From assembly GCF_902652985.1 (NCBI RefSeq), contig NC_047028.1:27404001-27468000 (forward strand): a DNA stretch of 64,000 nt, read 5' to 3'. Every line of letters starts with the position of its first letter. The stretch's first letter is position 1. The notes under the pieces are model-generated. The model made no database searches, was not told the DNA's origin, and saw only the letters and a list, made by a program, of their open reading frames with translations. The translations under genes were made by a program, and so were the position numbers. The stretch is from Pecten maximus (Eukaryota). Positions 2,812 through 59,898 of the stretch are shown here, in pieces.

Positions 2812-4020
2812 ATGGTACACGGTGGTGGATCCTGTTCCGGCGGGGGATATAGCGGTGGTGGATTCAGTGGTGGAACCTATATGTCTACTAATACTTACTA
2901 TAGAAACGGTCGTAGAAACGACTCGGAGGGCTGCTTAAAATGTATTGTATGTGTATGTCGCTGTATTGGGATATGTGTCTGCTGTAAGGGTCAGAGCCAT
3001 GTCGGCCAGATATTGATATTCTGGGCGTGGCTTGTGGTGTTATTTCTCATTACCGGATTGTCTGTGGGTCTTGGGAGATTTGGTCCTACGGATACGGCTG
3101 TCAGCCCGTCCGATATGATTATGATGAAGAGAGGAATCGACCCGACTTTCTGTGGGAGTGTGAGCGTACGAACCACGCTTCCTGTCAATACCTACCTCTT
3201 GCCTAAAGCTCCACAGATTGCGTCAGATCGTGTGAACTATTCATTTAATAAAACAACATCCATAAGTGACGACAGGTATGAATACTGGGGGTTTTACCTG
3301 ATTGCTGGTTCTGACATAACAGTTCTTACCTGTGCAGACTCCTTCGGTGATTTCTATATAGTCAAAGGAAAACACCAATTTGGACAATGGAAAAACGACA
3401 ATTATGATTCTGCCAATAACGAGAGGCATATACTCATAGGGGGATGTTCCTATCCGTTCTATAGCAGAACAAGGGTGTCCTACCACATCAGCACCACTGA
3501 TGAATACTACTTTGTCTTCGCCAATCATGGATCATCATCGATAGGTCTCGACCTTACATTCAATCTTACGCGTACTATATATGACTTGGGAGGCAATGAA
3601 AGCCTTCTTTGTGTTTCCGCAACATCATGTACCGTAGACCTGTCGAGCAGCGACTCCAAGCAAACCATTGTAGTATACGTACCACCGTTTGATGAATTTG
3701 ACTTTGACGTCACAACAGCGTGTTCCGCACTTATTTATGTTTATATTTTAATATTTTTCTTAATACCGTTCACGATTGGCAGTATTTTTACGGTCGTTGT
3801 GCTACACAGAAAAAGAAGAACTACCAGCACTCCTGTTAATGAGAGGAGGGAGCATCATGCCTTTTCAACAAATACCTCCCCGCCTCAATACCAGACGATG
3901 CCACGCGAGTCTGAACGCGAACATAAATTGACAACCCCGTCCTACGGTTTCCAGGACGACGGCATGGCCGTCCAACCCCCTTCCTATGAAGAGGCAGTCG
4001 CACGGAAGGATGGAATGTGA
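2812..4020 (+). CDS. 402-aa two-TM membrane protein with APD1-4 middle (DUF4793)-like luminal domain, Cys-rich juxtamembrane cluster and PPxY tail
   Basis: Long intact ORF, ACCATGG context, acceptor 7 nt upstream. Gly-rich N-terminus, CLKCIVCVCRCIGICVCC cluster, TM1 (ILIFWAWLVVLFLITGLSVGL), motifs YEYWGFYLIAGS and DEYYFVFAN recalled from the APD1-4 middle domain, TM2 (LIYVYILIFFLIPFTIGSIFTVVVL), PPQY and PPSYEEAV. Confidence 0.9.
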   Translation: MVHGGGSCSGGGYSGGGFSGGTYMSTNTYYRNGRRNDSEGCLKCIVCVCRCIGICVCCKGQSHVGQILIFWAWLVVLFLITGLSVGLGRFGPTDTAVSPSDMIMMKRGIDPTFCGSVSVRTTLPVNTYLLPKAPQIASDRVNYSFNKTTSISDDRYEYWGFYLIAGSDITVLTCADSFGDFYIVKGKHQFGQWKNDNYDSANNERHILIGGCSYPFYSRTRVSYHISTTDEYYFVFANHGSSSIGLDLTFNLTRTIYDLGGNESLLCVSATSCTVDLSSSDSKQTIVVYVPPFDEFDFDVTTACSALIYVYILIFFLIPFTIGSIFTVVVLHRKRRTTSTPVNERREHHAFSTNTSPPQYQTMPRESEREHKLTTPSYGFQDDGMAVQPPSYEEAVARKDGM

Positions 4021-21001: not shown

Positions 21002-22534
21002 TCACGTGTCCCTTTCAAGGTCGCTCATCCTCAGCTTCCGGTCTCCCGACGGGTAGTCGCTATACTCATTGTCCACAGTAAACGGTACGTCATCAGTTTG
21101 GCGGGCGTACCGGTAATACCTCCACCGCAAAACCATTGTACGTCTGAACCGGAGCACAAGAGCGATAATTGCGATGAGCACAATAGTTACAATTGCAAAT
21201 ATAATACCGTTCGTTATCCTACTGGACACTTCGGTGTGGTCAACACAAGGAAGGTCGCTGTCGTCAAGTTCTAGTACACTTTTATGGCTAAGTTCTGGTG
21301 GACTCGCGCACATCATTTGTGACGTCATCGACCGCTTATTCCACACATGCGGCTTCGATAGCCATTTCAACGCGCAGTCACAGTGGAGAGGGTTGTTGGC
21401 GATATTAAATATTGCCAAGTGTTCCCAGCTTCCAAGACTTTCCGGAAACGTTGTAAGGCTACAATTGCCGAGTAGAAGAGTATGCAAAATTTTTTGGTTT
21501 GCAAAAAGCCCATCTGGAAGACTTTTCAGTCCTTGGTTACCATTCAAATATATTGTTCTAAGCGATTTTAACTTCCGGAAAACTCCTGGCTGTATTTCTG
21601 TCAGAGCGAGATCATAAGACATATGGAACATAGTTAAACCTGGAAAGCCAATCATTGCGTCAGATGTAATAGTGTCTATGCTGTTACCACTTATGAAAAT
21701 TTCAAGTAGGCGATTTAAGTCATTTAACGGTGGAAATTCTGTCAACTTGTTGTTATCTAAAAATATATTGTTTATTTTCAGTGCTTTGTTTTCTCCGGTA
21801 TCATTGACAATAAATGCTTTGTTGCTTATTATCGAAATTTGATTGTCCGATAGATAGAGAGATTTGAGTGAGACACAATAAGCGAAGTCGTGGGCGTTCA
21901 CAATCTTGATGCGATTTCCGGACAGATGAAGTCTCATTAAATTAGGAAAATTTCTTAGAATTCTCCTCGGCACTACTTCTAATCCGTTGTGTCCTAGGTC
22001 CAGGGTTGTTACGCCGGGAAGGAGGCCAAAGCTATCCGAATATATAACAGTAATCTTATTATAGGATAAATTGATATGTATTAGTTTGGACATGTTCCAG
22101 AACGCATGTGTGTCTAACGTTGATATATTGTTGTGGGATAGTTCTAATGTTAGCAACGCCGGCAGATCAACGAACGTCCCAGGTCTTACGAACTCAAATA
22201 AATTCTCTCTTATACTAATCTGCTGTAGTCCATCCATTCCTTGAAAAGTGTTGTTTTCTATGATTTCGATACCGCTATTGGTAATTAACAAGATTTCCAA
22301 GTTTTCAAAAATTTGCAGCCTCGAATTGAGAACGGTCAGATTGTTACCTACTATATGCAACTTTGTTATCAAAGACGCGTTAAGAAAAGTATCTGGAAAA
22401 TCTGTAACGTCGGAACAATTACTGACCGTACCAGCAGTTAGATTGCAATTACAACTTCCGGTACAACTAATAACCACACTGGAGGAAATACCAAACACGG
22501 TTGTTAGGCACAGCAGTAGGAGCACGGTCGCCAT
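21002..22534 (-). CDS. 510-aa LRR type-I transmembrane protein, Tartan/Capricious-like (no Ig/FN3/TIR)
   Basis: Signal peptide; LRRNT CTGSCNC...C; ~13 LxxLxLxxNxI repeats; LRRCT NNPLHCDCALKWL...CASPPEL...C; TM GIIFAIVTIVLIAIIALVL followed by a basic stop-transfer; ~50-aa tail. Acceptor TTTTCAG at 22546 just upstream of the ATG. Confidence 0.95.
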   Translation of the reverse strand: MATVLLLLCLTTVFGISSSVVISCTGSCNCNLTAGTVSNCSDVTDFPDTFLNASLITKLHIVGNNLTVLNSRLQIFENLEILLITNSGIEIIENNTFQGMDGLQQISIRENLFEFVRPGTFVDLPALLTLELSHNNISTLDTHAFWNMSKLIHINLSYNKITVIYSDSFGLLPGVTTLDLGHNGLEVVPRRILRNFPNLMRLHLSGNRIKIVNAHDFAYCVSLKSLYLSDNQISIISNKAFIVNDTGENKALKINNIFLDNNKLTEFPPLNDLNRLLEIFISGNSIDTITSDAMIGFPGLTMFHMSYDLALTEIQPGVFRKLKSLRTIYLNGNQGLKSLPDGLFANQKILHTLLLGNCSLTTFPESLGSWEHLAIFNIANNPLHCDCALKWLSKPHVWNKRSMTSQMMCASPPELSHKSVLELDDSDLPCVDHTEVSSRITNGIIFAIVTIVLIAIIALVLRFRRTMVLRWRYYRYARQTDDVPFTVDNEYSDYPSGDRKLRMSDLERDT

Positions 22535-39730: not shown

Positions 39731-40800
39731 TATACCAAGGTGGGGAAAAGTAATCATGAAATGGATCCTAAAACTGAAACAAATCGGAATCCAAAAACAA
39801 CATTTAACCACTCGAACACTCTCTGTGATGTTATTGTTGTAAGGAACGACAAAAAGTGAAAAAATATATATTTCAAAAATCACCTTCACCTTCATGTCTT
39901 CATATTTAGAAGTTTGTCTTAGGACGAAGACCGATGTTCGTCGCAAAATAAAAAGTTTTCTTTAAGATTACATAAGGTATATCTCTTGGACGCTTCTAGA
40001 ACATATATGCACATCAAACGCAAAGTACCGTTGGGATATATGGTTTTGTGGTCATCGGTCAAGGATGGGGGGGGGGTCTAACTTAATCATTATGCTTGAT
40101 GTTTAGATAAAACCAACAAAATATATGTAGAATAGTGACTCTGTATATTCACATCATATACGCTAAGTTCTTAAACAGATGAGAGCTTCGTGGTCATCTT
40201 CAAGGGCCAAAGGGAGTTCAGATTTGCTATTATGACAAAACAATACATATGTTTGGTGTAATTTCAAGTCATTTACTACATATAAGCTCACGATCACATG
40301 TTATCCAATTGACAGTTTGTGACAAAGGTCACAAAGTATAAGACGAAGTCTTCTTCAACTCTAATAATGCTACAATAAGAAGGTAATTGCGTAACGTCTT
40401 CTCTCCCTCTCTGACCTTGGCCTTCAGCTCTTAATCGCATTGTGGTACATATGTCTTAGGCTGTCATGAGTTCCTTCCCTAGTCCTGGGTATCTGTCGTT
40501 TGTTAAACGTCCTGCTATGTCCTCAGTTATATCGAAACTGCTGTAAATCTAGTCTGGCCAAATAATGTACAAAGTAAGTCTGTCTAGTCTAAACTCTAGC
40601 CTACACTTCAGCTGATGCCTAATAGACGCCTTCCGTGACTGGCAACATTTTATGGCTAGCCCTACTTGACCAGGGCTGTCAAATTATTCCCGATCTTTTT
40701 TTATTTAGCTCCAGACATCCTGGTACTAATGGTGCAAAACAATTGGCCTGCAATTTGGCCATAACTGATGATAGATGCCGTGTATCAGAAATTATCCATA

Positions 40801-41460
40801 CAACATTGTGAACAAAACTCATCAGTAAATTCAGTCACATGAATTAACATGACTCATATGAAAAGCTTGCAATATTACTACGCAGTAAATAACGTTTTGT
40901 CCCTATGTCTAGTTCCACTACATAGTACAGTACCCTGATAATTCTATAATACATACAGATGTTTAAACATACACTATGCAATAATGTCATTGTTTCATTT
41001 GAAATACATGTTTATATATGTAATTAGTGAGCAATCTGTTACCTTACGCCGTGCTCTATGAACTTCATAACACTCTGTAACAAAGCCATTTTACCACAAA
41101 AAATATACTAAAACTTTTACCTAGAATAATAACTAACGGTCAACTTAGTATGGTATAGTTATATAGTGTAATATATTCAAATATTACGATAACTGTCAGG
41201 ACTATAGAGTCAATAAGGGTAACAGATGTCCATTTCTTAGTAAAAGACAATGTGACACGTATATTGCACAGCGCCATTCATATATCTTAGTACCTACTTT
41301 CAGACAAGGTAAGCACACTCATTTCATATTAGCCACATAATTACTTCCCGTCAAGGTAAAAACGCTCATTTCTTATTTACGTCTTACTTCCGGTCAAGGT
41401 AAACACATTCATTTCATCTTTATGACTTACTTCCGGTCAAGTTAAAATACTCATTTCATG
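40801..41460 (+). repeat. Left copy of ~660-bp direct duplication flanking the LINE
   Basis: Matches 43611-44270 at constant offset 2810 with 4 substitutions seen by eye. Confidence 0.95.
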
Positions 41461-43611
41461 TTTTTTTTTTTTTTTTTTTTAGTTCCAGACAAACATATAC
41501 ATCGATACTCTCTTAATTATGTACATGTAATCAATTTTTATGAATACTCCTACATTTTTGGTGTATTTTAAATCTATTATAATCTACTATTACATTCTTA
41601 ATTATTGGGCAGTATAGTGTATGTAGAATTGAAAACAATCAACCAATGAATATATTGCCTGGAGCTAATTGAAAAATGGGATTGGGGGATAGTTTGGATA
41701 AAAAGTAGAAGCTGATTTTGAAAAGGAAATACAAAGATAAGAGAGAAAGGAAACATAAAAGGAAGAAGAGAAGAGGGAACGAGATTTCCGACGAAAGCAA
41801 AGGCAATTTCTGAAAGGGTGACAAAAAAATAACTGACTATTGCTAATAAAAACATTTAATGGAAAAGAAACGAGTCCAACAAAAACACAAGCAAATTGAA
41901 AAAATATAAAAATTAATTACGTTGGTAAATTGAAATCTATTTCATAATGAAAGACACTACCTTAATGTAATGGTTATATTTATTTTCTAAAAGCTGAATG
42001 GTAAGCACTGAAATCCTCAATAAAAGTAGCTTCCTTGTCACATTTTTTTGCTAAGTATCTCTCGATGTTATATGAAGTTTTAAGGTTACTAATTAGAGTG
42101 GGTAAGTACAGAGCTTTACCTAAACACTTTTGACAATAAATATAGTGCTTCATATTTAGTATTATAATATTTTCTGCTCTGTTATTTTGGTGTGGGTTTT
42201 GTGACATTTTACCAAAAATGAAATCTTTTTTACATACATTAAATGTCTCATTACAAGTAGCTTGCAACCAAATTTGGAAAGCCATAATTAAATTTTGGAC
42301 TTTATTACATTCCCAAAGTACATGCTGTATTGTTTCTTTTTCTATGAAGCAGAAATTACACAAATCAGACTGAACAAAATGAATCTTTTTCAAATAAGTG
42401 TTTGTAGCTAAGACATGATGATTAATTCTAAATTGCATCCATTGTAGTTTTGAATTTTTATTTGTGTCAAAAGGCAATCTGTATATTTGTTTCCATTCCT
42501 CAATAGGTATATTTCCAAATATGGTGTCCCACTTTGCTTGGCCTGTAGGCAATACATTATTTTTATTCAATACATTATACATATCTCTTGTACCTTTTTT
42601 ACTTTTAATAACAATATCAATATACAGTGGTATCAATGGTAATGTAAGTGTTTTTTCAAAATTCCATCCTAATCGTTTGACTGCCAATATAATACCATTA
42701 TAATCAAGGAAGTTAGTATTTAAATTAAAAGCTTCATTAAATTCATTCTGTTGAAGAAAGCTGCCATCTTCTTTAAGTAAATCATTTATAAAAATCACAC
42801 CTTTATCAAACCATTGCTTATAATATACAGTATTATTACCTATTTTTATTAAATCATTATACCAAATTGGTAGAGATAATATTTGTTCTGGCATAAATAT
42901 TTCAATTTTCCCTCTCAATATATTCCACGCATTAAAAACATCAATCCAAAATTTGTTATGAAGTACATTTTTGATATTATATTCAATATATCTATTTCCT
43001 AACGTTAAAAACTTATTTCTATTAATTTTTGTAAAAAGAAGTGTCTGCCAATTTGAACTTTTAAGACAAATATTTCTAATCCATGTTGATTTTAAGGCCA
43101 TTTCAAAATGTTGGATATTAACCATTTTCAAGCCACCTTCTTCATAACATTTCACAATAATATCTCCTTTGACCTTTGCTATTGGACTTCCCCAAAGGTA
43201 TTCATTGAACATATTTTGAATCTCTTTCATAGTAGATTGGTTAGGTGATGGTAATCCTATAAATAAGTGTGTAAGTATTGGTAGTAGCAGTGTTTTTATT
43301 ACGGTTACTCTACCTATCGGAGTTATATATCGTCTATTCCACTGTTTAATTAGTGCCTTTAATTTAGCAATTTTTTCTTTGAAGTTAGACTGAACTATTT
43401 TACTGAGGTCAACATTGAAGTTAATTCCTAAAAGATTAAAATGTGTTAAACCCCATGATAGAGCAAGATTATTGACTAATTTCTCTGAACTGTATTTTTT
43501 ACTTCCTATCCATATAACTTGTGTTTTTGTGTAGTTTAATTTGAGTCCCGATATTTCCCAGAAGTAATTAAGTTCTTTTAAAGCATACCTAAGTGATGTT
43601 TCAGTACCATC
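41461..43611 (-). mobile_element. 5'-truncated L1/Tx1-clade LINE (RT C-terminal part, zf-RVT region, 3' UTR, poly-A)
   Basis: Stop-free ~545-codon frame (41980-43611) with ISGLKLNYTKT, LLGINF, GRVTVIKTLLLP, EEGGLKM, QFRINHHVLATN, CNFCFIEKETIQHVLWEC; T20 at 41461-41480. Confidence 0.95.
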
Positions 43612-44270
43612 AACATCGTGAACAAATCTCATCAGTAAATTCAGTCACATGAATTAACATGACTCATATGAAAAGCTTGCAATATTACTACGCAGTAAAT
43701 AACGTTTTGTCCCTATGTCTAGTTCCACTACATAGTACAGTACCCTGATAATTCTATAATACATACAGATGTTTATACATACACTATGCAATAATGTCAT
43801 TGTTTCATTTGAAATACATGTTTATATATGTAATTAGTGAGCAATCTGTTACCTTACGCCGTGCTCTATGAACTTCATAACACTCTGTAACAAAGCCATT
43901 TTACCACAAAAAATATACTAAAACTTTTACCTAGAATAATAACTAACGGTCAACTTAGCATGGTATAGTTATATAGTGTAATATATTCAAATATTACGAT
44001 AACTGTCAGGACTATAGAGTCAATAAGGGTAACAGATGTCCATTTCTTAGTAAAAGACAATGTGACACGTATATTGCACAGCGCCATTCATATATCTTAG
44101 TACCTACTTTCAGACAAGGTAAGCACACTCATTTCATATTAGCCACATAATTACTTCCCGTCAAGGTAAAAACGCTCATTTCTTATTTACGTCTTACTTC
44201 CGGTCAAGGTAAACACATTCATTTCATCTTTATGACTTACTTCCGGTCAAGTTAAAATACTCATTTCATG
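43611..44270 (+). repeat. Right copy of ~660-bp direct duplication flanking the LINE
   Basis: See 40801-41460. Confidence 0.95.
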
Positions 44271-44635
44271 TTAACGATTTACTTCCGGTCAAGGTAAACA
44301 CGTTCATTTTATCTGGATGACTTACTTCCGGTCAAGTCAAAATACTCATTTCATATTTAGGATTAACGTCCGATCAAGGTAAATACTCATTATATATATA
44401 TGACGTACTTTTGGTCAAGGTAGATACACTCATTTCATATTTACGATTTATTTCCGGTCAAGGGGAATACACTTTTTTCATTTTAACGACTGACTTCCGG
44501 TCAATGTAAATGCACTAATTTGATATATAAAACTTACTTCCGGTCAAGGAAAATAAACTCATTTCGTATTTACGACTTAATTCCGGTCAAGGTGAATACA
44601 CTCATTTCATATTTACAGCTTGCTTCTAGTCAAGT
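44103..44635. repeat. ~43-bp minisatellite, ~13 units (first 4 duplicated at 41293-41460)
   Basis: TTACTTCCGGTCAAGGTAAACACACTCATTTCATATTTACGAC-like unit. Confidence 0.95.
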
Positions 44636-47600
44636 ATCCACTTAAAAAAAAAAATAACCTACAAATATCCCAACAATTTAAAGGCAACTACTTCCTATTG
44701 TAACATGAGTAATCCACAGTCATTGAATCGCTTCCAATGTCTTACGCTAAAAGTGTATAATGTTCGACGCGAGGACACAGTTTAATATCAGGAATTCCGT
44801 AACTTAAAACAACACCAAGATAGTTTAAAGTCCATCCAGGGTCGTTTTTAACACTTGTAAACACAGAACAGCTTGTCAAGTAACAACACTGTTCAGATGT
44901 CATCTAGGATTCGTTTTCAATTACATTGTTCACAGTTCAACAGGGGTCAATGAATTACAACAACGTCAACATTGTTTAAAGAACATCAAGTATATTTCCA
45001 TCTCAGTATAGCCGTATAATTTAAACGTTAAACATTTATCATTTCGATACGCAATCTTTATGAACATAACAAAAAAGTTTTGTTTTCATTTCATAACAAC
45101 AGATCTTCACAATATTATATCAACTTTGTTATCTTTATAACATTAAGGATAGATTCTTAATAGTTTCATTTCGTCATGTCACACGTTTTAAATCTCTTTG
45201 AGAAACTTACGGATGTAGGCATATGAATCATGTATTATTACGTGTTCACTTCCTGCTTGTGACAGCTATAATGGACTAATAACTTATTCTATTGTGGACA
45301 TCCCTTTAAATTCTTTAACAGGTTGATCCAACACGCTAGTCTCGGCGAATTTGCCAGCTGCAGGACATTCTCCTAAAAAAAATACAAAGTTCTGCATTTC
45401 TTCTTTTAATATACCGATCTCTCTTATAAATAGCTCTGCTAGTTGTCTCTCGTGCTTGAAAGATCGTCAAGGTCAGATGTGCTATGCTGATGTAGCTATC
45501 ATCTGTTGGTGAGATCTTCTTTGCTTTTATTCTATGTCCTCCTTCGGTGCTATTTCGCTTGCAGACAATCCAAATCCAAATTTCCTTATTGCACTAACCC
45601 TTCACTTCTGCAAATCACTTATATTTCGCGTTGGATTTATTTTCGCGTTTATACGCGAGGAGAGTCAATCGCAAATTCCAATCCTTCTGAACTATTTGTT
45701 CGAAACTAACATCTACGAAGTTTGCGATTAAATCTTATAAATTATGTATGTTGGTGTTAGAGCTATTTGGGTATTATATTTTGCATCTGTTACGTTGTAA
45801 AAACAGGGAAATAATTGTGTTTGTATGTCTTAGGCGAGCGATGGCCACCATCTTTAGAACTCATTTCAAATTGAAGTGTGCTCCATTTTACAATATCGTA
45901 CCTATTTAGTACAACTGGTACGAACCCGATAAAGGAAAATATAGTATGTGTAGGAGAGTGAAACCCACAGTAGAGTCGGACGCTTCCGATACTCTGATTT
46001 ATCACAAATTGCGTCTTGGCTTAATAACCTGTTTTCGCCTTTGCTTCAATTTTGTAAGATTCTAATTTTATTTTTGTTTTTGATTCATCCGAAAACATTG
46101 AGGAGGAGATAATGTAAATGTACACACTAGCCTATATCTAATAACGGTATTGATATACGTACAATGGTACTCATACCACAGACATGTGTGGTAGATGTCA
46201 TTGTCTTGTAAAATGTCCATAGGTCAGTATCAGTGTCAAAAAGGACTGGTATATTTCCGTCAAGGCGACTCTTGCTACACACACTCGACGATACACAATT
46301 TAGATTTTTGTTGACGAAAGTTTAGCAAATGGATTTTACAATCTAATGTGACGCCAACATATGTACTGGTATGATGATAAACAGGATGACATATACTTCG
46401 GCATATAATGACGATAATTTTGTTAATAGTTTACAAAGTATGTGTCGGATATCGGGCACAGAAGGCAAATGAGTATACACAGCTCCCTCCATCATTGAAA
46501 ATGATGCATTTAATGCTTATTGTTATTTATTCTAACTATCAGGAAACAGGTTACTATAAATGTACATATTTTAACGGTAGTCTTATTTTAGTGTTTTTCG
46601 CGCTGCAGAAGCATTCCGCTAAATTGTGATTTTGCTAAGTGTAGTTTATTTACCTTGGTTTCTATGGCGATTACTGTTGGTGTGCTAATTCATCATTCCG
46701 TTAATCTTTTGTATCAGGGGTTTCCTGTTTGACGAATGTCGACAGTCCTCTTTTTGATGGACACCAACTCGCCCTGAAGGGCACCTGACAGTCCGTCCTG
46801 ACAACTCTGGTCATCAGTTCTTTAAATGTATTCCTAGGCGATTTTAACATGTTTGATGTGAATATATTACAAACAATGCATAGAGGGTGGACTCAAATGG
46901 ACATATTTATGTGCATAATGCAATTTTCTCGACTCTTAAACATTCAATAGTATCCGATTATCCGATTATCCCCATTTGTGTACATTCGTCACACCCAAGT
47001 GGACCTTTTCAACACATTCCGAATCACTGCACACTGATTGTTGTTTTGTCAGTGATATGTTTCCCATATTAACATATACATCATACATCATACATGTTAC
47101 CTATATCATGTTTTTGTCGATCTCAATCTGATACATTCCAAGAGTAATTTTGTACAAGACACACATTGTCAAGATATGTTACCAAGTAAGGAATACAGTA
47201 AACCCAAATATAATCAAGTCAATTACATCATACGGCTGGTTCGTGGAAACAACCATCGTTGTCAACATTGCAGGTTGAAGAAGCAGGAATGATACCATTC
47301 AGAAATGTTCGTGCACATGATGTATTGAAAGTACTTGAATTGATCAGTACATGTATTAACATCTCATCCATGACAGAATATTTCGATATTTTTCACTCGT
47401 GCTTTGCACTCGTGAAAATATCGATAGTCATACTCGTAAAATATGTTATATTCAACTAGAAACCATTTAATATCTTCTTTATATTTTCAACTTAAACAGT
47501 TGATTTCACAACGACGTCAAGTTTACAAATCTGTGTAAAAACGTGACATGCAGCTATGTCACAGCAAATATCAAGGCTTAATTTCTACCAGAGTGTCTAT

Positions 47601-52785: not shown

Positions 52786-53001
52786 GTTAGTAGTAAAGAA
52801 TTCACATTTTTTTTATTATTATCATTAAAAAATTCGCATATTAGCCTCGCAGAAGACTTCTATGGAGCGCAGATTCATTATTACTTCTCATTTAGCAGTA
52901 AAACTTTAATATAATCTTTGTGGTATTTACTTGTTATCTTATTATTTCGAATTAGTTTTCAACTTAAAATGATCTATAAAAGCTGTATATCTTGATTTCA
53001 G

Positions 53002-53738
53002 GATCTCGTTTGACTCCTACCTCACATGCTGGCCGCACCTTGGTGTGTTTCTGGTGGATTTTTGTCTTGGTTACGCTCATTTTGTATGCTTCCAGTCTCA
53101 CGTCCATTTTGTTTTTGAAGTCCCCGGATGTTGAAAATCCACTTCCATTTTACACCTTTGAACAAATGACAAAGCAATCTAAAATAAAGTACGGCACCGC
53201 CAAATCTGGTTCTGCGAAAAGCTACTTCAGGAAGTCCTCTGGAGCGCTCGAACGACAAATATACAAGCTTTGGAAAAGTAATCCAGACCTTTGGGTGCCG
53301 TCGATTGAGGAAGGGGTTGCCAGGGTGAAAAATGGTAACGGGGATTACGCTCTGGTCTTGGATAGCGAATTCGCATATTACACGGCGGCAAAAACCTGTG
53401 GCTTGGCTGTGACAGGCAAATTGTATTTGGAACGGTCATACGCCTTCGCCTGTGGACCAGACACCGATATTTGTCGTCAGCTCGATCATGCTATTCTCGA
53501 TATGAAGGAAAACGGTGAGCTACTTATGATCGCAGACAAATGGATGAGTGGACCTTGTGGCAGCTATGCCGACCTATCGACGCCTGAACGCTACATCCCG
53601 CCGACGTTGGATGCTTATCTAGACGTGAAACACATGGATATAACACGATTCACGTTGCCACTAGCCAGCATATTGTGTGGAGTGATAATAAGCATTCTGG
53701 TAGCTGCAATAGAGAAATTCCGGTCCAAGTCCAAAGGG
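53002..53738 (+). CDS. iGluR/IR-family gene, exon 6 (M3, S2, M4)
   Basis: PTSHAGRTLVCFWWIFVLVTLILYASSLTSIL, QSKIKYGT, SIEEGVARVKNG, YALVLDS, DHAILDMKENGELLMIADKW, M4; GGG|GTAAGT donor at 53738/53739. Confidence 0.95.
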
Positions 53739-54398
53739 GTAAGTCGTCAAGCACGCGTAACTTTACCTCAAGAGGCATGAGTTTGTGTAAAGTTCTAATA
53801 TTACAAAAAATATAATCGTAAAATTTTACCGTTTTTTTCTTAATGTACTCATTTGAATTTTCTGGTGAATGACGTACTGTTATATATGGCGACATTTTAT
53901 CTACTAAACTTCGGGTTGTCGCAGTTTCTGAAGGCGACAAAGCGACAAGGCGACAAGGATTTTATTTCTTTACTCAAGACACCATCATAAAACAAATTTA
54001 CATTTTCATCTCGTCTAAATTCATTAAAGAGTGCATATCAAGTATCTGTTTGTTTACATGTTTGAGGCTTTATTCCAATAACCTCATCACAATAGAATAT
54101 CCCTGTTACTATGACAATGGAAAAATTAGGTATTTACTTACAACACATAATTGGGGGAAACAGAATAAGGAAAGATTGTGCAAACCCGGTCCCGGATGTG
54201 GTAGGTGTGTAGGAATATATCAAGGAATCATGTATTTTGTTCGGCGGACATCAATTTACTCACAAATGATGCCGAGCAAAATTCGATCACTGCTGTTGAA
54301 ATTAATGAATTGTTATAATAAAAAAAAACACATACAATGTATTTGAAAAAAATTAGATTTTTCTCTATGAGAAGAATGATTGTCTGTTAATTTTACCT

Positions 54399-54843: not shown

Positions 54844-55579
54844 TGGGCAACCGGGAATCCTCAAAAATGGAACTCTTCGATAACTTCAGTTTTGACAGTA
54901 TGCAGCTCTCAAACGTCTCCAGTGAACTGTAAACGTCAAAAATATAAAACGAATAGGTGCCTTTTATATGTATATCTATATTTCACAGTCACGAAACATC
55001 TAAATATGGTTATAATATGGACACTTTAGTGTATAACCATCAAACTGAAGCAAGGCTAATACTTATTCTTGTTTGAAATTGATTACGTTTTCAACCTTTT
55101 AAATAATGTAGAAAACAAAGGTAACTTAGGTTCGGCATGTTTAAACAGATTTATTATGCTGAAGAAGATACACAGTATAGCTTGGTTTGACTGCTCGCTT
55201 CGAGTCTCCTTTCACGGCCGAATGCTGTGATCAGAGGAGGCTGGATTTACCCTGCCTTTCATGGGTCTAAGTCTTGTTTGTACGCCATGCTCGAATGTTC
55301 CACGGTTTGCTGAGCAGCACTTCTGTTGTCAGATGCCGCTGCAACAAACTCTTCCAATCTTAAGATGGCTGACCTTTACGCGTAACTTGTGTCGCCATAT
55401 TTGTGATTTGATGACGATGCTATAAGCACCTCCTAGCCTATTGCTGCCGTACATTGCATACCCACAGCGTTAATAGGAGTACAAAAGAGCAGCATGAGTA
55501 TGAGGCGCCGTTTTACTATCTAATCAGTATTTTACATCAAGAATTGGACTTTCTAACATAAAAATAGAGAGATTTCGGA

Positions 55580-58495
55580 CTATATGATTTAATTGTGAAA
55601 TTATATTACATAGTGTCATCGTTGCTTGATTTGATTTCATGATTATTTTACTAGTATATGATTTGATTGTATCATTACATTATATGATGTCATCATTGTA
55701 TGATTGGATATGATCATTATAATATATTATATGATTGGATCATTACATTATATAATTTGATTTTATCATTATATTATATAATTTGATTTTATCATCATAT
55801 TAAATGATGGCATCATTGTATGATTTGATTTGATCATCATATGATTAGGTTTTATCATTTTAAAATATGTTGTCATTATTGTATGATTTTATTTGATCAT
55901 TATAATAGATGATTTGATTTGATCATTATATTATGCTGTTTCACTAATACATTTCCATGTATCGTTTTATCGTTATATCCTTCTTTTCGTTATATCATTC
56001 TGTCTCAACATTATATCATGCTTTATTCACCATGTGTTTTAGTGTAATCGTTTTCATGGTTATATAATTCCATATTGTATCTTTCTACCATCCCTTCGTC
56101 ATATTATTAAAGCTTTTATCCATCTTTACTATTCAATCAGTATTGTATATCAAGAATCTGACATTTCTATCATAGAAAATAGAGAGATTTTGGATTGTAT
56201 GATTTGAGTGTATCATTATATTATATGATGTCATCATTGTATAATTTGATTTGATCATTATTATATGTCATGCCGTGGCGTCCAGCCTCCATCCGTCAAC
56301 AATTGACTTCTTCTTCTGAACCGCTGATCAGAATTTTACCAAATTTTGTAGGAAGCATTCCTAGGTGGCTGGGATTCAAATTTATACAAATGATGGGGCT
56401 GACCCCGTAGGGGCCTTTGGGGCGGGGCCAAAGGGGGTCTATTTGGTAATATTGATATTAATGACTTTTTCTCTGGATCTAAGCAATGTATGACATTGAT
56501 ATTTCAGCGGTAACATCCCTAGGTGGTTGGGATTCAAATTTATTCAAATAATTGTGTTGACCGAACAGGTGCCAGAGGGGCGGGGCCAGTAGGGGTCCAT
56601 TTGATAATTTTGATATTAACGACTTCTTCTCTGGACCTAAGCAATGTATGACATTGATATTTCAGCGGTAGCATCCCTAGGTGGCTGGGATTCAAATTAA
56701 TTGCATTTTTGAAACTCAAATGATAAACACATTCATGTTGTAAAAATAGAATCAGGGGTCTTTCCCCACCGTTGAAGATTTGTTTATTTTGTTATGTCTT
56801 TGAAACCGTTGAGGTCTTCATCCCAAAACCATATATAGCATTACTGGGCATGAAGAGATGAACATAATTGAGATGTAAAAGTAAGCCCAGGGGTCTATCC
56901 CCAATCCCATGGGAATTTGGGTTTCTTTAAACACAATCATGTTGAGTCTTGACATCGTTTCCAGATTATATCTTTGAAGCACCCCGTAATCATACATATA
57001 ACATTGTTAGACGTTAACAAATATAACATGAACATTATTTTAATGTTTGCTCAAATAAACCAAGTGAGCGATACAGGCCCTCTAGGCCTCTTGTATGATA
57101 TGATGTCATCATTATATGATTTGATTTGATCATTATATTATATGATGTCATCATTGTATGATTTGATTGGATCATTATATTTTATGATTTGATAATTATA
57201 TATGATTTGATTTAATCATTATATTATACGATTTGATTTGATCATTATTTTATATTAATTGATTTGATCATTATATTATATTATTTGATTTGATCATTAT
57301 ATTATATTATGTATTCTTTGTATGATTTGATTATTTTATGATATGATTTTATTTAATCATTATGATGTCATCATTGTATAATTTGATTTGATCATCATAT
57401 GATATGATTTTATTTGATCATTATTTAATATGATGTCATCATTGTAAGATTTGATTTGATCATCATATGATATGATTTGATCATTATATTTTATAATTTG
57501 ATTGGATCATTATATAATATAATTGGATTTTATCATTATATTATATCATTTGATTTGATCATTATATGATATGATTTTATTTATTCATTATGATGTCATC
57601 ATTGTATTATTTGATTTGATCATCATATGGTATGATTTGATTTGATCATTATTTAATATGATGCCATCATTGTTTGATTTGATTTGATCATCATATGATA
57701 TGATTTGAATTGATCATTATTTAATATGATTTGATCATTATATTATATAATTTGATTTTTTATCATTATATAGTATTTTTTGATTTGATCATTATATTAT
57801 ATGATTTTATTTTATCATTATGATGTCATCATTGTATGATTTGATTTGATCATCATATGATATGATTTTATTTATTCATTATTTAATATGATGTCATCAT
57901 TGTAAAATTTGATTCGATCATTATAATATATGATTTTATTTGATCATTAAATTATATAATTTGATTTGATCATTATATTATATGATTTGATCATTATAAT
58001 ATATGATTTGATCATTATATTATATGATTTGATCATTATAATATATGATTTGATTTGATCATTATATTATATGATTTGATCGTTATATTATGTGATGTCA
58101 TGATTGTAAGACTTGATTTGATCATTATATTATATAATTTGATTTTATCATTATATTATATGATTTGATCATTATATTATGATTTTATTTGATCATTATA
58201 TGATTTTATTTGATCATTATATTATATGATTTGATCATTATAATATATGATTTGATCATTATATTATATGATTTGATCATTATATTATATGATTTGATCA
58301 TTATATTATGATTTTATTTGATCATTATATTATATGATCTGATTTGATCATTATATTACATGATTTGATCATTATATTATGTGATGTCATGATTGTAAGA
58401 CTTGATTTGATCATTATACATGTATTACATAATTTGATTTTATCATATTATATGATGCCAGCATTATGATTTGATTTGATCATTATATTATGCTG
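55580..58495. repeat. AT-rich satellite (TGATTTGATCATTATATTATA, 21-26-bp units) inside a tandem duplication, interrupted by a HINE
   Basis: Arrays at 55580-55935, 56195-56262 and 57095-58490; unique flanks duplicated (55516-55580 vs 56128-56195; 55935-56125 vs 58490-58677). Confidence 0.95.
56263..57094 (+). mobile_element. Non-autonomous Helentron (HINE) with 158-bp internal tandem repeats
   Basis: CCTAGGTGG(C/T)TGGGATTCAAATT at 158-bp period; 3' GTGAGCGATAC-AGGCCCTCTAGGCCT hairpin-CTTGT; related to 63745-64000. Confidence 0.85.
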
Positions 58496-59898
58496 TTTCA
58501 TTAATACATTTCCATGTATCGTTTTATCGTTATATCCTTCTTTTCGTTATATCATTCTGACTCAACATTATATCATGCTTTATTCATCATGTGTTTTAGT
58601 GTAATCGTTTCCATGGTTATATTATTCCAAATTGTATCTTTATACCATCCCGTCATCACTATTAAAGTTTCCATCGTATATATATCTTCGTAGCGATTAG
58701 CATATATTATATTCATGTATATATATACATGTTATGCACGGTCAATTATGTCAGAGTTTATACCAGTAACTGGTAATTTCAATACATATTTTATGTTATG
58801 GAGTCATACACAAAAAAACAAAACAAAAAAAACAACAACAAAAAACCGAAAGCATACGCATCATAAACAGCATTATGGTTTATTCAGAGTACACTCCGGT
58901 TTTTTTTTCTATTATACCGTCATAACATAAAAGATATATTCAAGTTAATCCTTAAAAAAAAAATTAAAAATGTATTAATCCATTTCTGTTGTTCAGTGTG
59001 TTAAATATTTTAACGATTCGGTCATGAGAAGGGAAGCTTATCTACACCTGACTTACTTCATGATTTTCAGATGTCTTCATCAAGATATCATTTCTGCTTT
59101 GGAGAAAGTACCTGAATATGGTTTCGTGAGCTTCTTATAATACTGAAATACGAATTACATAAACCCAACAGGCCAAATAATAGAAAACAATAATTAATTA
59201 CATGTAGTTAATAAATTCCATTGCATGAAAGCAACACCTCTTAAAGAAATACATCAGCCATATTTCAATGCAATTATTCCAAGCTCGTAAATTATTATCA
59301 ACGTATTTTTTAGTATTAGTCAATATATTTATGTAAGTCACAGTTAAATGACACTTACAATAAATGCGGTCACACTAAATTCAAAGGCAGCACCACCATG
59401 AAGAAAAGCTGACAACTTTCTGTATATTGTTCCGAATGGTTCCTGCAAGCCACAAGAATCAAGCTACGACAAGCTCCATGGTTTAACGGACTATAAATGT
59501 CAACATAAACTACAGGAAAATATTATCTAATGTAATATTTTTAACAAATATGTCATAAAACAAAGGCTTTTCCTTAATTAGGAAAATTAAAAATGTCCCC
59601 AACAATATTTTTAAATACCCAGACCAGTGCATAACATTGTTTACAAATATTATTCGAGATAAACAGTGCTTTAAAACCAGAAAACATATATTTACAAAAC
59701 ACGATATATGCTGGTGTATCGTTATATCTTATCAATATACTATTTCACTATTTATAAGAAGACATTGTCGTTTCATGAGTATGAAATCTACAGTTATAGT
59801 CGCTTTATTGACGACCTAGAATGTTGTTACTGAAAGTGTGATGGTAGAAAATTCAAAGAGCTATGTACTTAAATTCAGATCGGTTAAAAGAAATCCAA

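What the first reader, a model, noticed from the sequence alone, without database searches (positions are those of the whole stretch)
40801..44270. L1/Tx1 insertion flanked by a ~660-bp target-site duplication
Seen: 40801-41460 and 43611-44270 differ at only 4 positions that I could find. The left copy ends exactly at the poly-T, and the right copy starts exactly at the 5' truncation point, with CCAT(A)CAA microhomology. The empty site reads CATGTT^AACG. Established: TPRT nicks at TT/AA-type sites and normally gives TSDs of about 7-20 bp. Inference: second-strand cleavage or annealing ~660 bp away, so retrotransposition duplicated host intronic DNA. The stop-free ORF indicates a young family. 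Alternatives are repair templated from the homologue or a haplotype-merging assembly artefact.
Basis: partly seen in the sequence, partly recalled or inferred. Interest (0 to 1): 0.8.

Follow-up and report, generated by a model that had tools for sequence, protein, structure and literature searches.

The report
LINE insertion between two 662-base host copies
A young jumping gene in the king scallop genome sits between two near-identical 662-base copies of ordinary host DNA, which is either a rare oversized landing-site duplication of a kind already known from human cells or an error made when the two parental chromosomes were assembled, and the public data I could reach cannot tell which.

Summary
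Window 40801-41462 and 43611-44272 (662 bp, 2810 bp apart) differ at 4 positions. They abut exactly a 20-T run and a 5'-truncated, minus-strand LINE (41483-43610). The LINE is L1-like: a full-length relative has one 1262-aa ORF with APE endonuclease, RT and a zinc knuckle, and its best solved relative is human L1 ORF2p, E 4e-93. The family is young, with most copies 99% or more identical. Of 17 other copies examined at both ends, 13 have TSDs of 9-41 bp, mostly 14-18, so 662 bp is a roughly 40-fold outlier. The 662-bp segment is otherwise single-copy. An independent individual carries the empty, single-copy allele on one contig.

I could not show that the duplication exists in a real molecule. 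No listed contig crosses either LINE junction. At least 2 of the 4 copy differences are variants seen among individuals. The assembly is a haplotype-collapsed wtdbg2 build of a 1.7%-heterozygous animal with Arrow gap filling. Other notes of this scan report the same pattern, including around Helitron-like elements.

My estimate is real giant TSD about 0.5 and assembly artefact about 0.45. If real, it is a natural example of a kind already known from human L1.

The parts
40801..41462 (.). Left copy of the 662-bp host segment. It ends at the LINE poly-A junction (J1).
   Evidence: 658 of 662 positions are identical to 43611-44272; no other full-length copy exists in the genome.
41463..41482 (-). 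Poly-A tail of the LINE, seen as 20 T on the plus strand. The two T at 41461-41462 are ambiguous between tail and target.
   Evidence: Other family copies carry tails of about 20-50 A at the same element end.
41483..43610 (-). 5'-truncated L1-like LINE: the last 2128 nt of a roughly 5.3-kb element. The 3' UTR is 41483-41979. The C-terminal part of the single ORF starts at 41980.
   Evidence: 99.6% identity to L012 over 2149 nt, with homology starting at 43611/43610; longer copies continue with LINE sequence; the full-length relative has APE + RT + zf-RVT and matches human L1 ORF2p at E 4e-93.
41980..43632 (-). Open frame of 550 aa. Its first 7 codons (43632-43612) lie in the right host copy and the rest is LINE ORF.
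   Evidence: ORF list. (zf-RVT, E 1.6e-5, below the Pfam cut-off). for the full-length ORF it matches.
43611..44272 (.). Right copy of the host segment. It begins at the LINE 5' truncation point (J2) and runs straight on into the downstream flank (AACG...).
   Evidence: the X3 contig joins 40807 to 43618 and continues to 44800. That is the empty allele.
41287..41462 (.). Four units of a 43-bp minisatellite at the end of the left copy. The insertion site lies inside this array.
   Evidence: families D2 and D3.
44097..44656 (.). The same minisatellite in the right copy. It continues for about 9 more units beyond the duplication boundary.
   Evidence: families D1-D3.
40796..40801 (.). Host bases CCATAC at the upstream boundary. 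They resemble the LINE end CCATC at 43607-43611 (imperfect microhomology).

Best explanation
A young L1-like LINE integrated by target-primed reverse transcription at a TT|AA site inside a 43-bp minisatellite. The plus strand was nicked at ...CATGTT|AACG. Its T-rich 3' end primed on the poly-A tail and about 2.1 kb of cDNA was made. The break on the other strand that was finally used lay 662 bp upstream, not about 15 bp away. Candidate sources are an unrelated distal nick, a replication-associated break, or break-induced copying from the reciprocal end. The cDNA end was joined there through a short imperfect microhomology, with the element truncated at that point. Fill-in of the 662-nt single-stranded stretches then left one copy of the host segment on each side of the LINE.

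Shown:
- the anatomy;
- the LINE type;
- the nick site;
- the family's normal 14-18 bp TSD;
- the single-copy empty allele in another animal.

Inferred:
- that both copies lie on one real chromosome;
- where the second break came from;
- how the ends were joined.

The allele is polymorphic, or private to the sequenced animal. The four copy differences cannot date it. They may be allelic variants brought in by recombination or by consensus polishing.
For: - The two copies abut the poly-A tail and the truncation point to the base.
- The target is TT|AA. The TSDs of the 13 other copies where one could be read all begin with AA.
- The segment is unique in the genome, so the LINE did not land between two members of a repeat family.
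- One 1378-nt contig of an independent individual (X3, depth 27.1, about the local total) runs flank - single copy - flank with no LINE. The duplication and the LINE are therefore absent together, and no duplication-without-LINE allele was seen.
- The J2 junction has 1 + 4 nt of bulged microhomology, found in 1.1% of random junctions by a post hoc definition. This is as described for 5'-truncated L1 joints.
- The window holds no N.
- The 0.6% difference between the copies is of the same order as the LINE's 0.37% difference from its closest relative.
- The kind is documented. TSDs over 100 bp occur in up to 10% of HeLa L1 events and in 57-91% of events in NER-deficient cells, reaching 6.7 kb (PMC5223499, passages). 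'Extremely long TSDs' go with 5'-truncated L1 (PMC2912911, passages). Tandem duplications of 1-10 kb are regarded as large TSDs (bioRxiv 10.1101/2024.12.14.628481, passages).
- One family member has a 41-bp TSD (L037), so the length distribution has a tail.
Against: - No contig listed crosses J1 or J2 in any of the 4 runs. The listed LINE contigs run on into full-length LINE at 43611. 502 pieces and 36 loose ends were not shown.
- Contig depth over the segment shows no clear 1.5-fold excess. In X1 it is 21, against 25.9 for the two flank haplotypes summed. In X5 it is 65.4, against 62. The flank figures scatter about 2-fold, and the tool warns against using them.
- At 40817 and 40966 the two copies carry the two states that also differ among the runs' contigs. 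That is expected if the copies come from the two parental haplotypes.
- The upstream flank (40428-40638) is a site-by-site mosaic of two haplotypes found in X1 and X5. The consensus here mixes haplotypes.
- The assembly (figures identical to Pecten maximus xPecMax1) is wtdbg2 + Arrow + scaffolding + Arrow gap filling. Heterozygosity is 1.71% and no haplotig purging is mentioned (PMC7191990).
- Unchecked notes of this scan report the same architecture around Helitron-like elements. TPRT cannot explain those.
- 13 of 13 other readable TSDs in the family are 41 bp or shorter.
Confidence: 0.5

Rival explanations
1. Assembly artefact (heterotype false duplication). The sequenced scallop is heterozygous for an ordinary insertion of this LINE with a TSD of about 15 bp. 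The collapsed-haplotype assembler kept the segment twice. One copy comes from the LINE-bearing haplotype (flank-X-polyT-LINE). The other comes from the empty haplotype (X-downstream flank). The two pieces were joined without N by consensus building or by Arrow gap filling. On this reading J2 is not a biological joint.
For: [quoted passage not shown] The word 'purge' occurs 0 times in the paper.
- (PMC9516828, passages): false duplications arise at borders between homozygous and heterozygous sequence. They are mostly separated by a gap and are 'sometimes connected by ... incorrect gap filling'.
- the left flank is a mosaic of two haplotypes. 2 of the 4 copy differences are states that differ among runs. 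No clear excess depth appears over the segment in X1, which with X2, X4 and X11 makes 4 runs of one 2019 sample, matching the paper's four 10X runs. No junction contig is shown.
- (unchecked notes) report the same bracket architecture around Helitron-like elements (609 bp, 3.8 kb) and other LINEs. I confirmed one of these, a different LINE family with 815-bp copies differing at 1 position.
- Only young insertions, which are the ones likely to be heterozygous, show it.
- Four of the six reported sizes (609, 662, 815, about 1150 bp) are near the 1024-bp node length of wtdbg2. That figure is recalled and comes from no call.
Against: - A sequence joint between the LINE end and 40801-like DNA has to come from somewhere. 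No standard overlap step creates it, and I could not derive it cleanly from the assembler's algorithm.
- The joint shows bulged microhomology (1.1% by chance). A consensus or alignment switch would also favour matching bases, so this counts for little.
- The window holds no N.
- The copies differ by only 0.6% here and 0.12% in L052, against 1.71% genome-wide heterozygosity. Polishing with multi-mapping reads would homogenise them, and local diversity in this segment is low (0-3 differences among the sampled alleles).
Confidence: 0.42
2. Real event, but the LINE cDNA bridged two DNA molecules. After priming at CATGTT|AACG on one chromatid, the cDNA end was joined to a broken end 662 bp upstream on the sister chromatid or the homologue. 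This makes a LINE-filled unequal exchange. If the partner was the homologue, the two copies differed at allelic SNPs from birth.
For: - (PMC7058536, passages): L1 events in tumours bridge sister chromatids and yield direct tandem duplications with an endonuclease motif at the 3' breakpoint.
- at the four differing sites the right copy equals the empty allele of X3 at 3 of 4. The left copy carries the A at 40817, which X1 and X5 contigs show in phase with the upstream flank, and the A at 40966, seen in X1.
Against: The same SNP pattern follows from later recombination, from polishing cross-talk or from the artefact. The documented cases are somatic and megabase-sized. Nothing here tells one duplex from two.
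Confidence: 0.06
3. A tandem duplication of the 662-bp segment existed first, and the LINE later inserted exactly at the joint between the two copies.
For: None specific. Tandem duplications next to minisatellites do occur.
Against: The LINE has no short TSD of its own. Its two ends coincide to the base with the copy boundaries. The only non-LINE allele seen has one copy. 13 of 13 readable family insertions make TSDs of 9-41 bp.
Confidence: 0.02

Closest known systems
Large target-site duplications of human LINE-1 (cultured cells, NER-deficient cells)
   Same: A poly-A LINE sits at a TT|A-type nick. It is 5'-truncated, flanked by direct copies of hundreds of bp of unique target DNA, and has microhomology at the 5' joint. 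Reported TSDs run from 100 bp to 6.7 kb, and the proposed cause is use of a distal, unrelated second-strand nick (PMC5223499, passages; PMC2912911, passages, citing Gilbert 2002/2005 and Symer 2002, which I did not see).
   Different: Those are engineered elements in HeLa or repair-deficient cells. This would be a natural, heritable (or at least germline-assembled) insertion of an ORF1-less L1-like element in a bivalve. It lies in a minisatellite, and its reality is not yet proven.
L1-mediated tandem duplications in tumours and L1-expressing clones
   Same: An L1 insertion lies at the joint of a direct tandem duplication, with an endonuclease motif and poly-A at one breakpoint. [quoted passage not shown]
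   Different: Those events are somatic and often kilobases to megabases long. The proposed routes are break-induced replication or sister-chromatid bridging. Here the size is 662 bp and the route is unknown.
Heterotype false duplication in long-read assemblies
   Same: Two near-identical copies lie on the same scaffold at a heterozygous structural difference. The copies differ at heterozygous sites. The assembly was made without haplotype purging (PMC9516828; PMC7191990).
   Different: Typical cases have an N gap between the copies and are larger. Here there is no N, and the copies are separated exactly by a complete insertion with biologically sensible joints.
L1 superfamily non-LTR retrotransposons (L1/Tx1 group)
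   Same: The full-length relative has an APE endonuclease, an RT and a C-terminal zinc knuckle in one ORF. It also has a poly-A tail, TSDs of about 15 bp and a TT|AA target. Its best solved relative is human L1 ORF2p.
   Different: No ORF1 of 80 aa or more was found in the 970-nt leader of the full-length copy. Clade placement within the superfamily (L1 versus Tx1) was not tested.

Membership tests
L1-superfamily LINE | N-terminal APE-type endonuclease followed by a reverse transcriptase in one ORF | tested here: met
   on the full-length relative L042: Exo_endo_phos at residues 8-214 (E 9e-9) and RVT_1 at 529-753 (E 2e-34); human L1 ORF2p E 4e-93 over residues 3-891, against E 2e-22 for R2. 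The window copy keeps only the part after the RT core.
L1-superfamily LINE | Poly-A tail, and TSDs of about 7-20 bp at a TT|AAAA-like target | tested here: met
   All copies end in A tails. 13 of 17 copies examined at both ends have readable TSDs of 9-41 bp, and 10 of the 13 are within 14-20 bp counting shared A's. All 13 start with AA.
L1-superfamily LINE | ORF1 upstream of ORF2 | tested here: not met
   In the 970 nt upstream of the 1262-aa ORF of L042, the longest sense ORFs are 74 and 80 aa of low-complexity sequence. Only one full-length copy was read.
L1-superfamily LINE | Placement in the Tx1 or the L1 clade by RT phylogeny | not tested
LINE giant TSD (large target-site duplication) | Direct repeats of unique target DNA abut the poly-A end and the 5' end of one insertion to the base, with no separate short TSD | tested here: met
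LINE giant TSD (large target-site duplication) | The empty allele has exactly one copy and no LINE | tested here: met
   X3 record 10 (1378 nt) lies on 40676-40807 and then 43618-44800 ('skips 2810').
LINE giant TSD (large target-site duplication) | Single DNA molecules contain both copies and the LINE, giving an extra copy of the segment in the carrier | tested here: inconclusive
   Only Logan contigs were available. No listed contig crosses J1 or J2. The depth figures (X1: 21 against 25.9; X5: 65.4 against 62, or against about 42) fit either copy number.
Heterotype false duplication (assembly artefact) | An assembly gap, or wrongly filled gap, lies between the copies | tested here: inconclusive
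   The window holds no N. The published pipeline, however, filled gaps with Arrow, so a former gap cannot be excluded.
Heterotype false duplication (assembly artefact) | The copies are told apart by heterozygous (haplotype-specific) k-mers of the sequenced animal | tested here: inconclusive
   The states at 40817 and 40966 differ among or within the runs' contigs. The states at 40807(C) and 41149(T) were seen in no contig. Contigs drop minor alleles.
Heterotype false duplication (assembly artefact) | Each copy at haploid read depth, with discordant linked or long reads across the joint | not testable with these tools
   This needs raw PacBio and 10X reads of the source animal. Only contigs were served.

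The most novel reading that the evidence does not exclude
The duplication is real and is one of many. In the king scallop germline, several young LINE families often finish integration at a second-strand break 0.6-4 kb away. This resembles human L1 in excision-repair-deficient cells. These elements would then routinely duplicate host DNA, exons included, as they land. The result would be a species-level shift in how TPRT intermediates are resolved and a steady source of small tandem duplications.
Probability: 0.15. Interest if true: 0.65.

Novelty: new member of a known kind. Interest (0 to 1): 0.3.

Why it matters
If real, this is a natural, polymorphic, invertebrate example of a giant LINE target-site duplication. 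That outcome is so far documented mainly with engineered human L1 in cultured or repair-deficient cells and in tumours. It would show that retrotransposition can duplicate hundreds of bases of host DNA in the germline. Together with the other cases noted in this genome, it would make second-strand break choice testable in a wild species.

If it is an artefact, it matters in a different way. It would flag a systematic error class in this widely used reference: host DNA doubled around heterozygous transposon insertions. That error inflates duplicate counts and could create false exon duplications. Either answer can be had cheaply from the existing PacBio reads.

Tried and rejected
- **Dispersed repeat or LTR-like part of the element:** rejected. 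The 662-bp segment is full-length only at these two places, and other family copies do not carry it.
- **LINE homology extending into the host copy:** rejected. One divergent copy (L040) aligned 30 nt further, but that is a weak chance resemblance offset by 1 nt.
- **The 40-46 bp matches of 40798-40843 on C17:** these belong to an unrelated repeat of more than 2.4 kb. I used them only to polarise two of the differences, and I do not rely on that.
- **X1 loose end before 40812:** I suspected a third allele. It is a paralogous locus on C6, so I dropped it.
- **Copy counting by contig depth in X1 and X5:** abandoned as evidence. Flank haplotype depths differ 2-fold in X1 (17.1 against 8.76). Flank contigs in X5 range from 23 to 65. 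The tool warns against such use.
- **Dating the insertion from the 4 differences:** rejected. At least 2 are shared with variation among the runs.
- **Survey of more family copies for long TSDs:** Fifteen loci (L013, L017-L022, L024, L025, L027, L028, L030, L032, L039, L040), mostly longer copies whose 5' ends lie outside my loci, were not evaluated; L012, L014, L015 and L016 were examined through the longer stretches L042-L045. Two rearranged copies (L034, L035) were not evaluated either. L043, L045, L046 and L048 gave no readable TSD. L045 is interrupted by another insertion, and L048 lies in a tandem repeat.
- **Pfam on large ORFs of the window** did not show whether the site is intronic.
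- **PMC4619696** turned out to describe an ordinary 15-bp TSD and is not relevant.
- **Supplements** were closed. Tables S1 and S2 of PMC5223499 (HeLa TSD lists) were not seen.
- **The search of earlier findings by place near the window** gave nothing.
Full report
**Observation**

The window has two 662-bp stretches, 40801-41462 and 43611-44272, that agree at 658 positions. The differences are at 40807, 40817, 40966 and 41149. Identity ends sharply on both sides.

Between the two stretches lie 20 T (41463-41482) and 2128 nt that are the reverse complement of the 3' part of a LINE (41483-43610). An open 550-aa frame runs on the minus strand (41980-43632).

The window contains no N. The 662-bp segment occurs full-length only at these two places in the 918,306,378-bp assembly.

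**The insert**

A search of the window's own genome found 48 matches among 40 scored candidates out of 248. Most are 99% or more identical. In 20 longer copies, LINE sequence continues upstream of the position equivalent to window 43610/43611. The window copy is therefore 5'-truncated exactly where the right host copy begins, with 1 nt (G on the LINE strand) shared.

A full-length relative (L042, about 5.3 kb) has:
- a 970-nt leader with no ORF of more than 80 aa;
- one ORF of 1262 aa with Exo_endo_phos, RVT_1 and a weak zf-RVT.

Its best solved relative is human L1 ORF2p (E 4e-93 over residues 3-891). R2 proteins score E 2e-22. It is thus an L1-superfamily element without a recognisable ORF1. 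I did not test L1 against Tx1.

**Normal behaviour of the family**

I could read both ends of 17 other copies, and 13 gave a TSD:

| Copy | TSD (bp) |
|---|---|
| L023 | 16 |
| L026 | 14 |
| L029 | 18 |
| L031 | 15 |
| L033 | 15 |
| L036 | 15 |
| L037 | 41 |
| L038 | 15 |
| L042 | 14-20 |
| L044 | 12-16 |
| L047 | 16 |
| L049 | 11-18 |
| L050 | about 9 |

These lengths are maxima that count shared A's. All 13 begin with AA. Four copies gave none: L043, L045, L046 and L048.

The window's target reads CATGTT|AACG on the plus strand, a TT|AA nick like the others. A 662-bp flanking repeat is therefore about 40 times the family norm.

**Reads**

All runs that hold the stretch are served as Logan contigs. 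I laid X1, X3, X5 and X6 on 40300-44800 (the single call allowed).

The clear result comes from X3, a different sample and study. One 1378-nt contig, at the full local depth of 27.1, lies on 40676-40807 and then on 43618-44800. This is the empty allele with one copy and no LINE. The LINE and the second copy are thus absent together in that animal. No allele with two copies and no LINE appeared.

The filled allele could not be confirmed:
- No listed contig crosses the poly-T joint (J1) or the 5' joint (J2).
- LINE contigs run on into full-length LINE at 43611.
- 502 pieces and 36 loose ends were not shown.
- Contig simplification tends to drop low-depth branches off high-copy repeats (my inference).

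Depth is unhelpful. The segment is at 21 in X1, against 17.1 + 8.76 for the two flank haplotypes. It is at 65.4 in X5, against flank figures between 23 and 62. The tool itself says not to use depth this way.

**The four differences**

| Source | 40807 | 40817 | 40966 | 41149 |
|---|---|---|---|---|
| Left copy | T | A | A | T |
| Right copy | C | T | T | C |
| X3 empty allele | T | T | T | C |
| X1 and X5 contigs joined to the upstream flank | T | A | not covered | not covered |
| X1 contig over the segment | not covered | not covered | A | C |
| X5 contig over the segment | not covered | not covered | T | C |

At least two of the four differences (40817 and 40966) therefore coincide with variation among animals. 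This fits several scenarios:
- two haplotypes assembled in tandem;
- a join to the homologue;
- a later crossover with an empty allele;
- polishing with reads of the empty haplotype.

The differences can neither date the event nor decide its origin. In addition, at 40428-40638 the window alternates site by site between two haplotypes that X1 and X5 both carry. The local consensus mixes haplotypes.

**Which genome**

The size and scaffold count of G000 are exactly those printed for Pecten maximus in Kenny et al. 2020 (PMC7191990, passages read). That paper describes:
- wtdbg2 v2.2 on PacBio CLR reads;
- Arrow polishing, and freebayes polishing with four 10X runs;
- scaffolding with Scaff10X and 3D-DNA;
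- heterozygosity of 1.71%.

Haplotig purging is not mentioned. Sample S1 (four runs, 2019) is therefore probably the sequenced animal, but this is my inference.

Ko et al. 2022 (PMC9516828, passages) describe heterotype false duplications at heterozygous borders. These are usually separated by a gap and are sometimes joined by wrong gap filling.

**Other cases in this genome**

Earlier notes of this scan (leads, not evidence) list similar brackets:
- around other LINEs: 816 bp, about 1.15 kb and about 4 kb;
- around Helitron-like elements: 609 bp and 3.8 kb.

I checked one myself. At C14:21344240-21351498 (L052), an 815-bp direct repeat with 1 difference brackets a 5628-bp element. The repeat is full-length only at that locus. 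The element has an APE+RT ORF and no DNA similarity to my family.

A pattern shared by unrelated LINE families could be biology. The same pattern around rolling-circle elements cannot be TPRT and points to a class-blind cause, most simply the assembly. I did not verify the Helitron cases.

**Mechanism if real**

1. The plus strand is nicked at TT|AA and primes on the poly-A tail.
2. The cDNA reaches 2128 nt.
3. The other strand is broken 662 bp upstream.
4. The cDNA end joins there by imperfect microhomology: 1 nt exact plus 4 nt after a 1-nt bulge. This pattern occurs in 1.1% of random junctions and was defined post hoc. At least 1 nt of exact overlap occurs in 48%.
5. Fill-in duplicates the segment.

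This matches what is described for human L1:
- TSDs over 100 bp occur in up to 10% of HeLa events. They occur in 57-91% of events in XPA-, XPC- or XPD-deficient cells and reach 6.7 kb. The authors propose use of 'a more distal unrelated nick' (PMC5223499, passages).
- Extremely long TSDs are coupled with 5'-truncated insertions (PMC2912911, passages).
- Tandem duplications of 1-10 kb are 'regarded as large TSDs' and attributed to break-induced replication (bioRxiv 10.1101/2024.12.14.628481, passages).
- L1 can bridge sister chromatids (PMC7058536, passages).

Gilbert 2002/2005 and Symer 2002 are known to me only through these citations. My four literature searches surfaced no report of such an event in a mollusc. 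None of them was aimed at that question, so I make no claim that it is not in print.

**Verdict**

The identity of the LINE, its youth, the target site and the single-copy empty allele are all established.

Whether the second copy exists in a real chromosome is open:

| Explanation | Confidence |
|---|---|
| Real duplication made during integration | 0.5 |
| Real, by bridging to the sister chromatid or homologue | 0.06 |
| Assembly artefact at a heterozygous insertion | 0.42 |
| Pre-existing tandem duplication | 0.02 |

Even if real, it is a new member of a known kind. I score interest at 0.3. It would be higher only if a genome-wide, read-verified excess of such events in scallop LINEs were shown.

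Noticed in passing
L052 = G000:C14:21344240-21351498 (6.05 Mb before the window): A different LINE family is bracketed by 815-bp direct repeats that differ at 1 position. The element is 5628 bp with an APE+RT ORF of 1154 aa and no long A tail. The repeats are full-length only at this locus.
   Followed up: partly
window 41287-41462 and 44097-44656: A 43-bp minisatellite (core ...TTACTTCCGGTCAAGGTAAA...). The LINE landed inside it. Four units are duplicated and about nine more follow.
   Followed up: no
window 40635-40843: This short stretch has diverged relatives on C6 (68.6% over 220 bp) and at three places on C17 (87-92% over 40-46 bp, inside a repeat of more than 2.4 kb). The upstream boundary of the duplication (40801) falls inside it. 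A plus-strand open stretch of about 61 codons ends in a stop codon at 40809-40811. It is unclear whether this is an exon or a transposon relic.
   Followed up: partly
window 40428-40638: The window sequence alternates site by site between two haplotypes that runs X1 and X5 both carry (12 variant sites). No laid contig has the window's combination. This looks like a mosaic consensus of a heterozygous animal.
   Followed up: partly
L037 (G000:C6:9134346-9138961): This family copy has a 41-bp TSD, 2-3 times the family norm. It is an intermediate case in the TSD length distribution.
   Followed up: no
L045 (G000:C17:33832521-33842069): This LINE copy is split by about 5.3 kb of other DNA. The two LINE parts overlap by 14 nt, as if another element had inserted into it with a 14-bp TSD.
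   Followed up: no
L043 (G000:C13:15472925-15482473): This full-length family copy has no detectable TSD within 3.87 kb upstream or 380 bp downstream. Possible causes are a target deletion, a 5' transduction or a rearrangement.
   Followed up: no
L042 3816-4785: The full-length element has a 970-nt leader without an ORF1. The leader and the 3' UTR are both rich in CT/GA low-complexity runs.
   Followed up: no
window 55551-58371 and 55909-56101 / 58466-58658: A dense satellite with periods of 21 and 26 bp lies in two blocks. A 193-bp pair at 95% identity, 2557 bp apart, flanks part of it.
   Followed up: no
window 2812-4020 (+), 21002-22534 (-), 52992-53780 (+): Host coding ORFs with Pfam support: an APD1-4-like E3 ligase, a leucine-rich-repeat protein with LRRCT, and a ligand-gated ion channel (Lig_chan) exon.
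   Followed up: no
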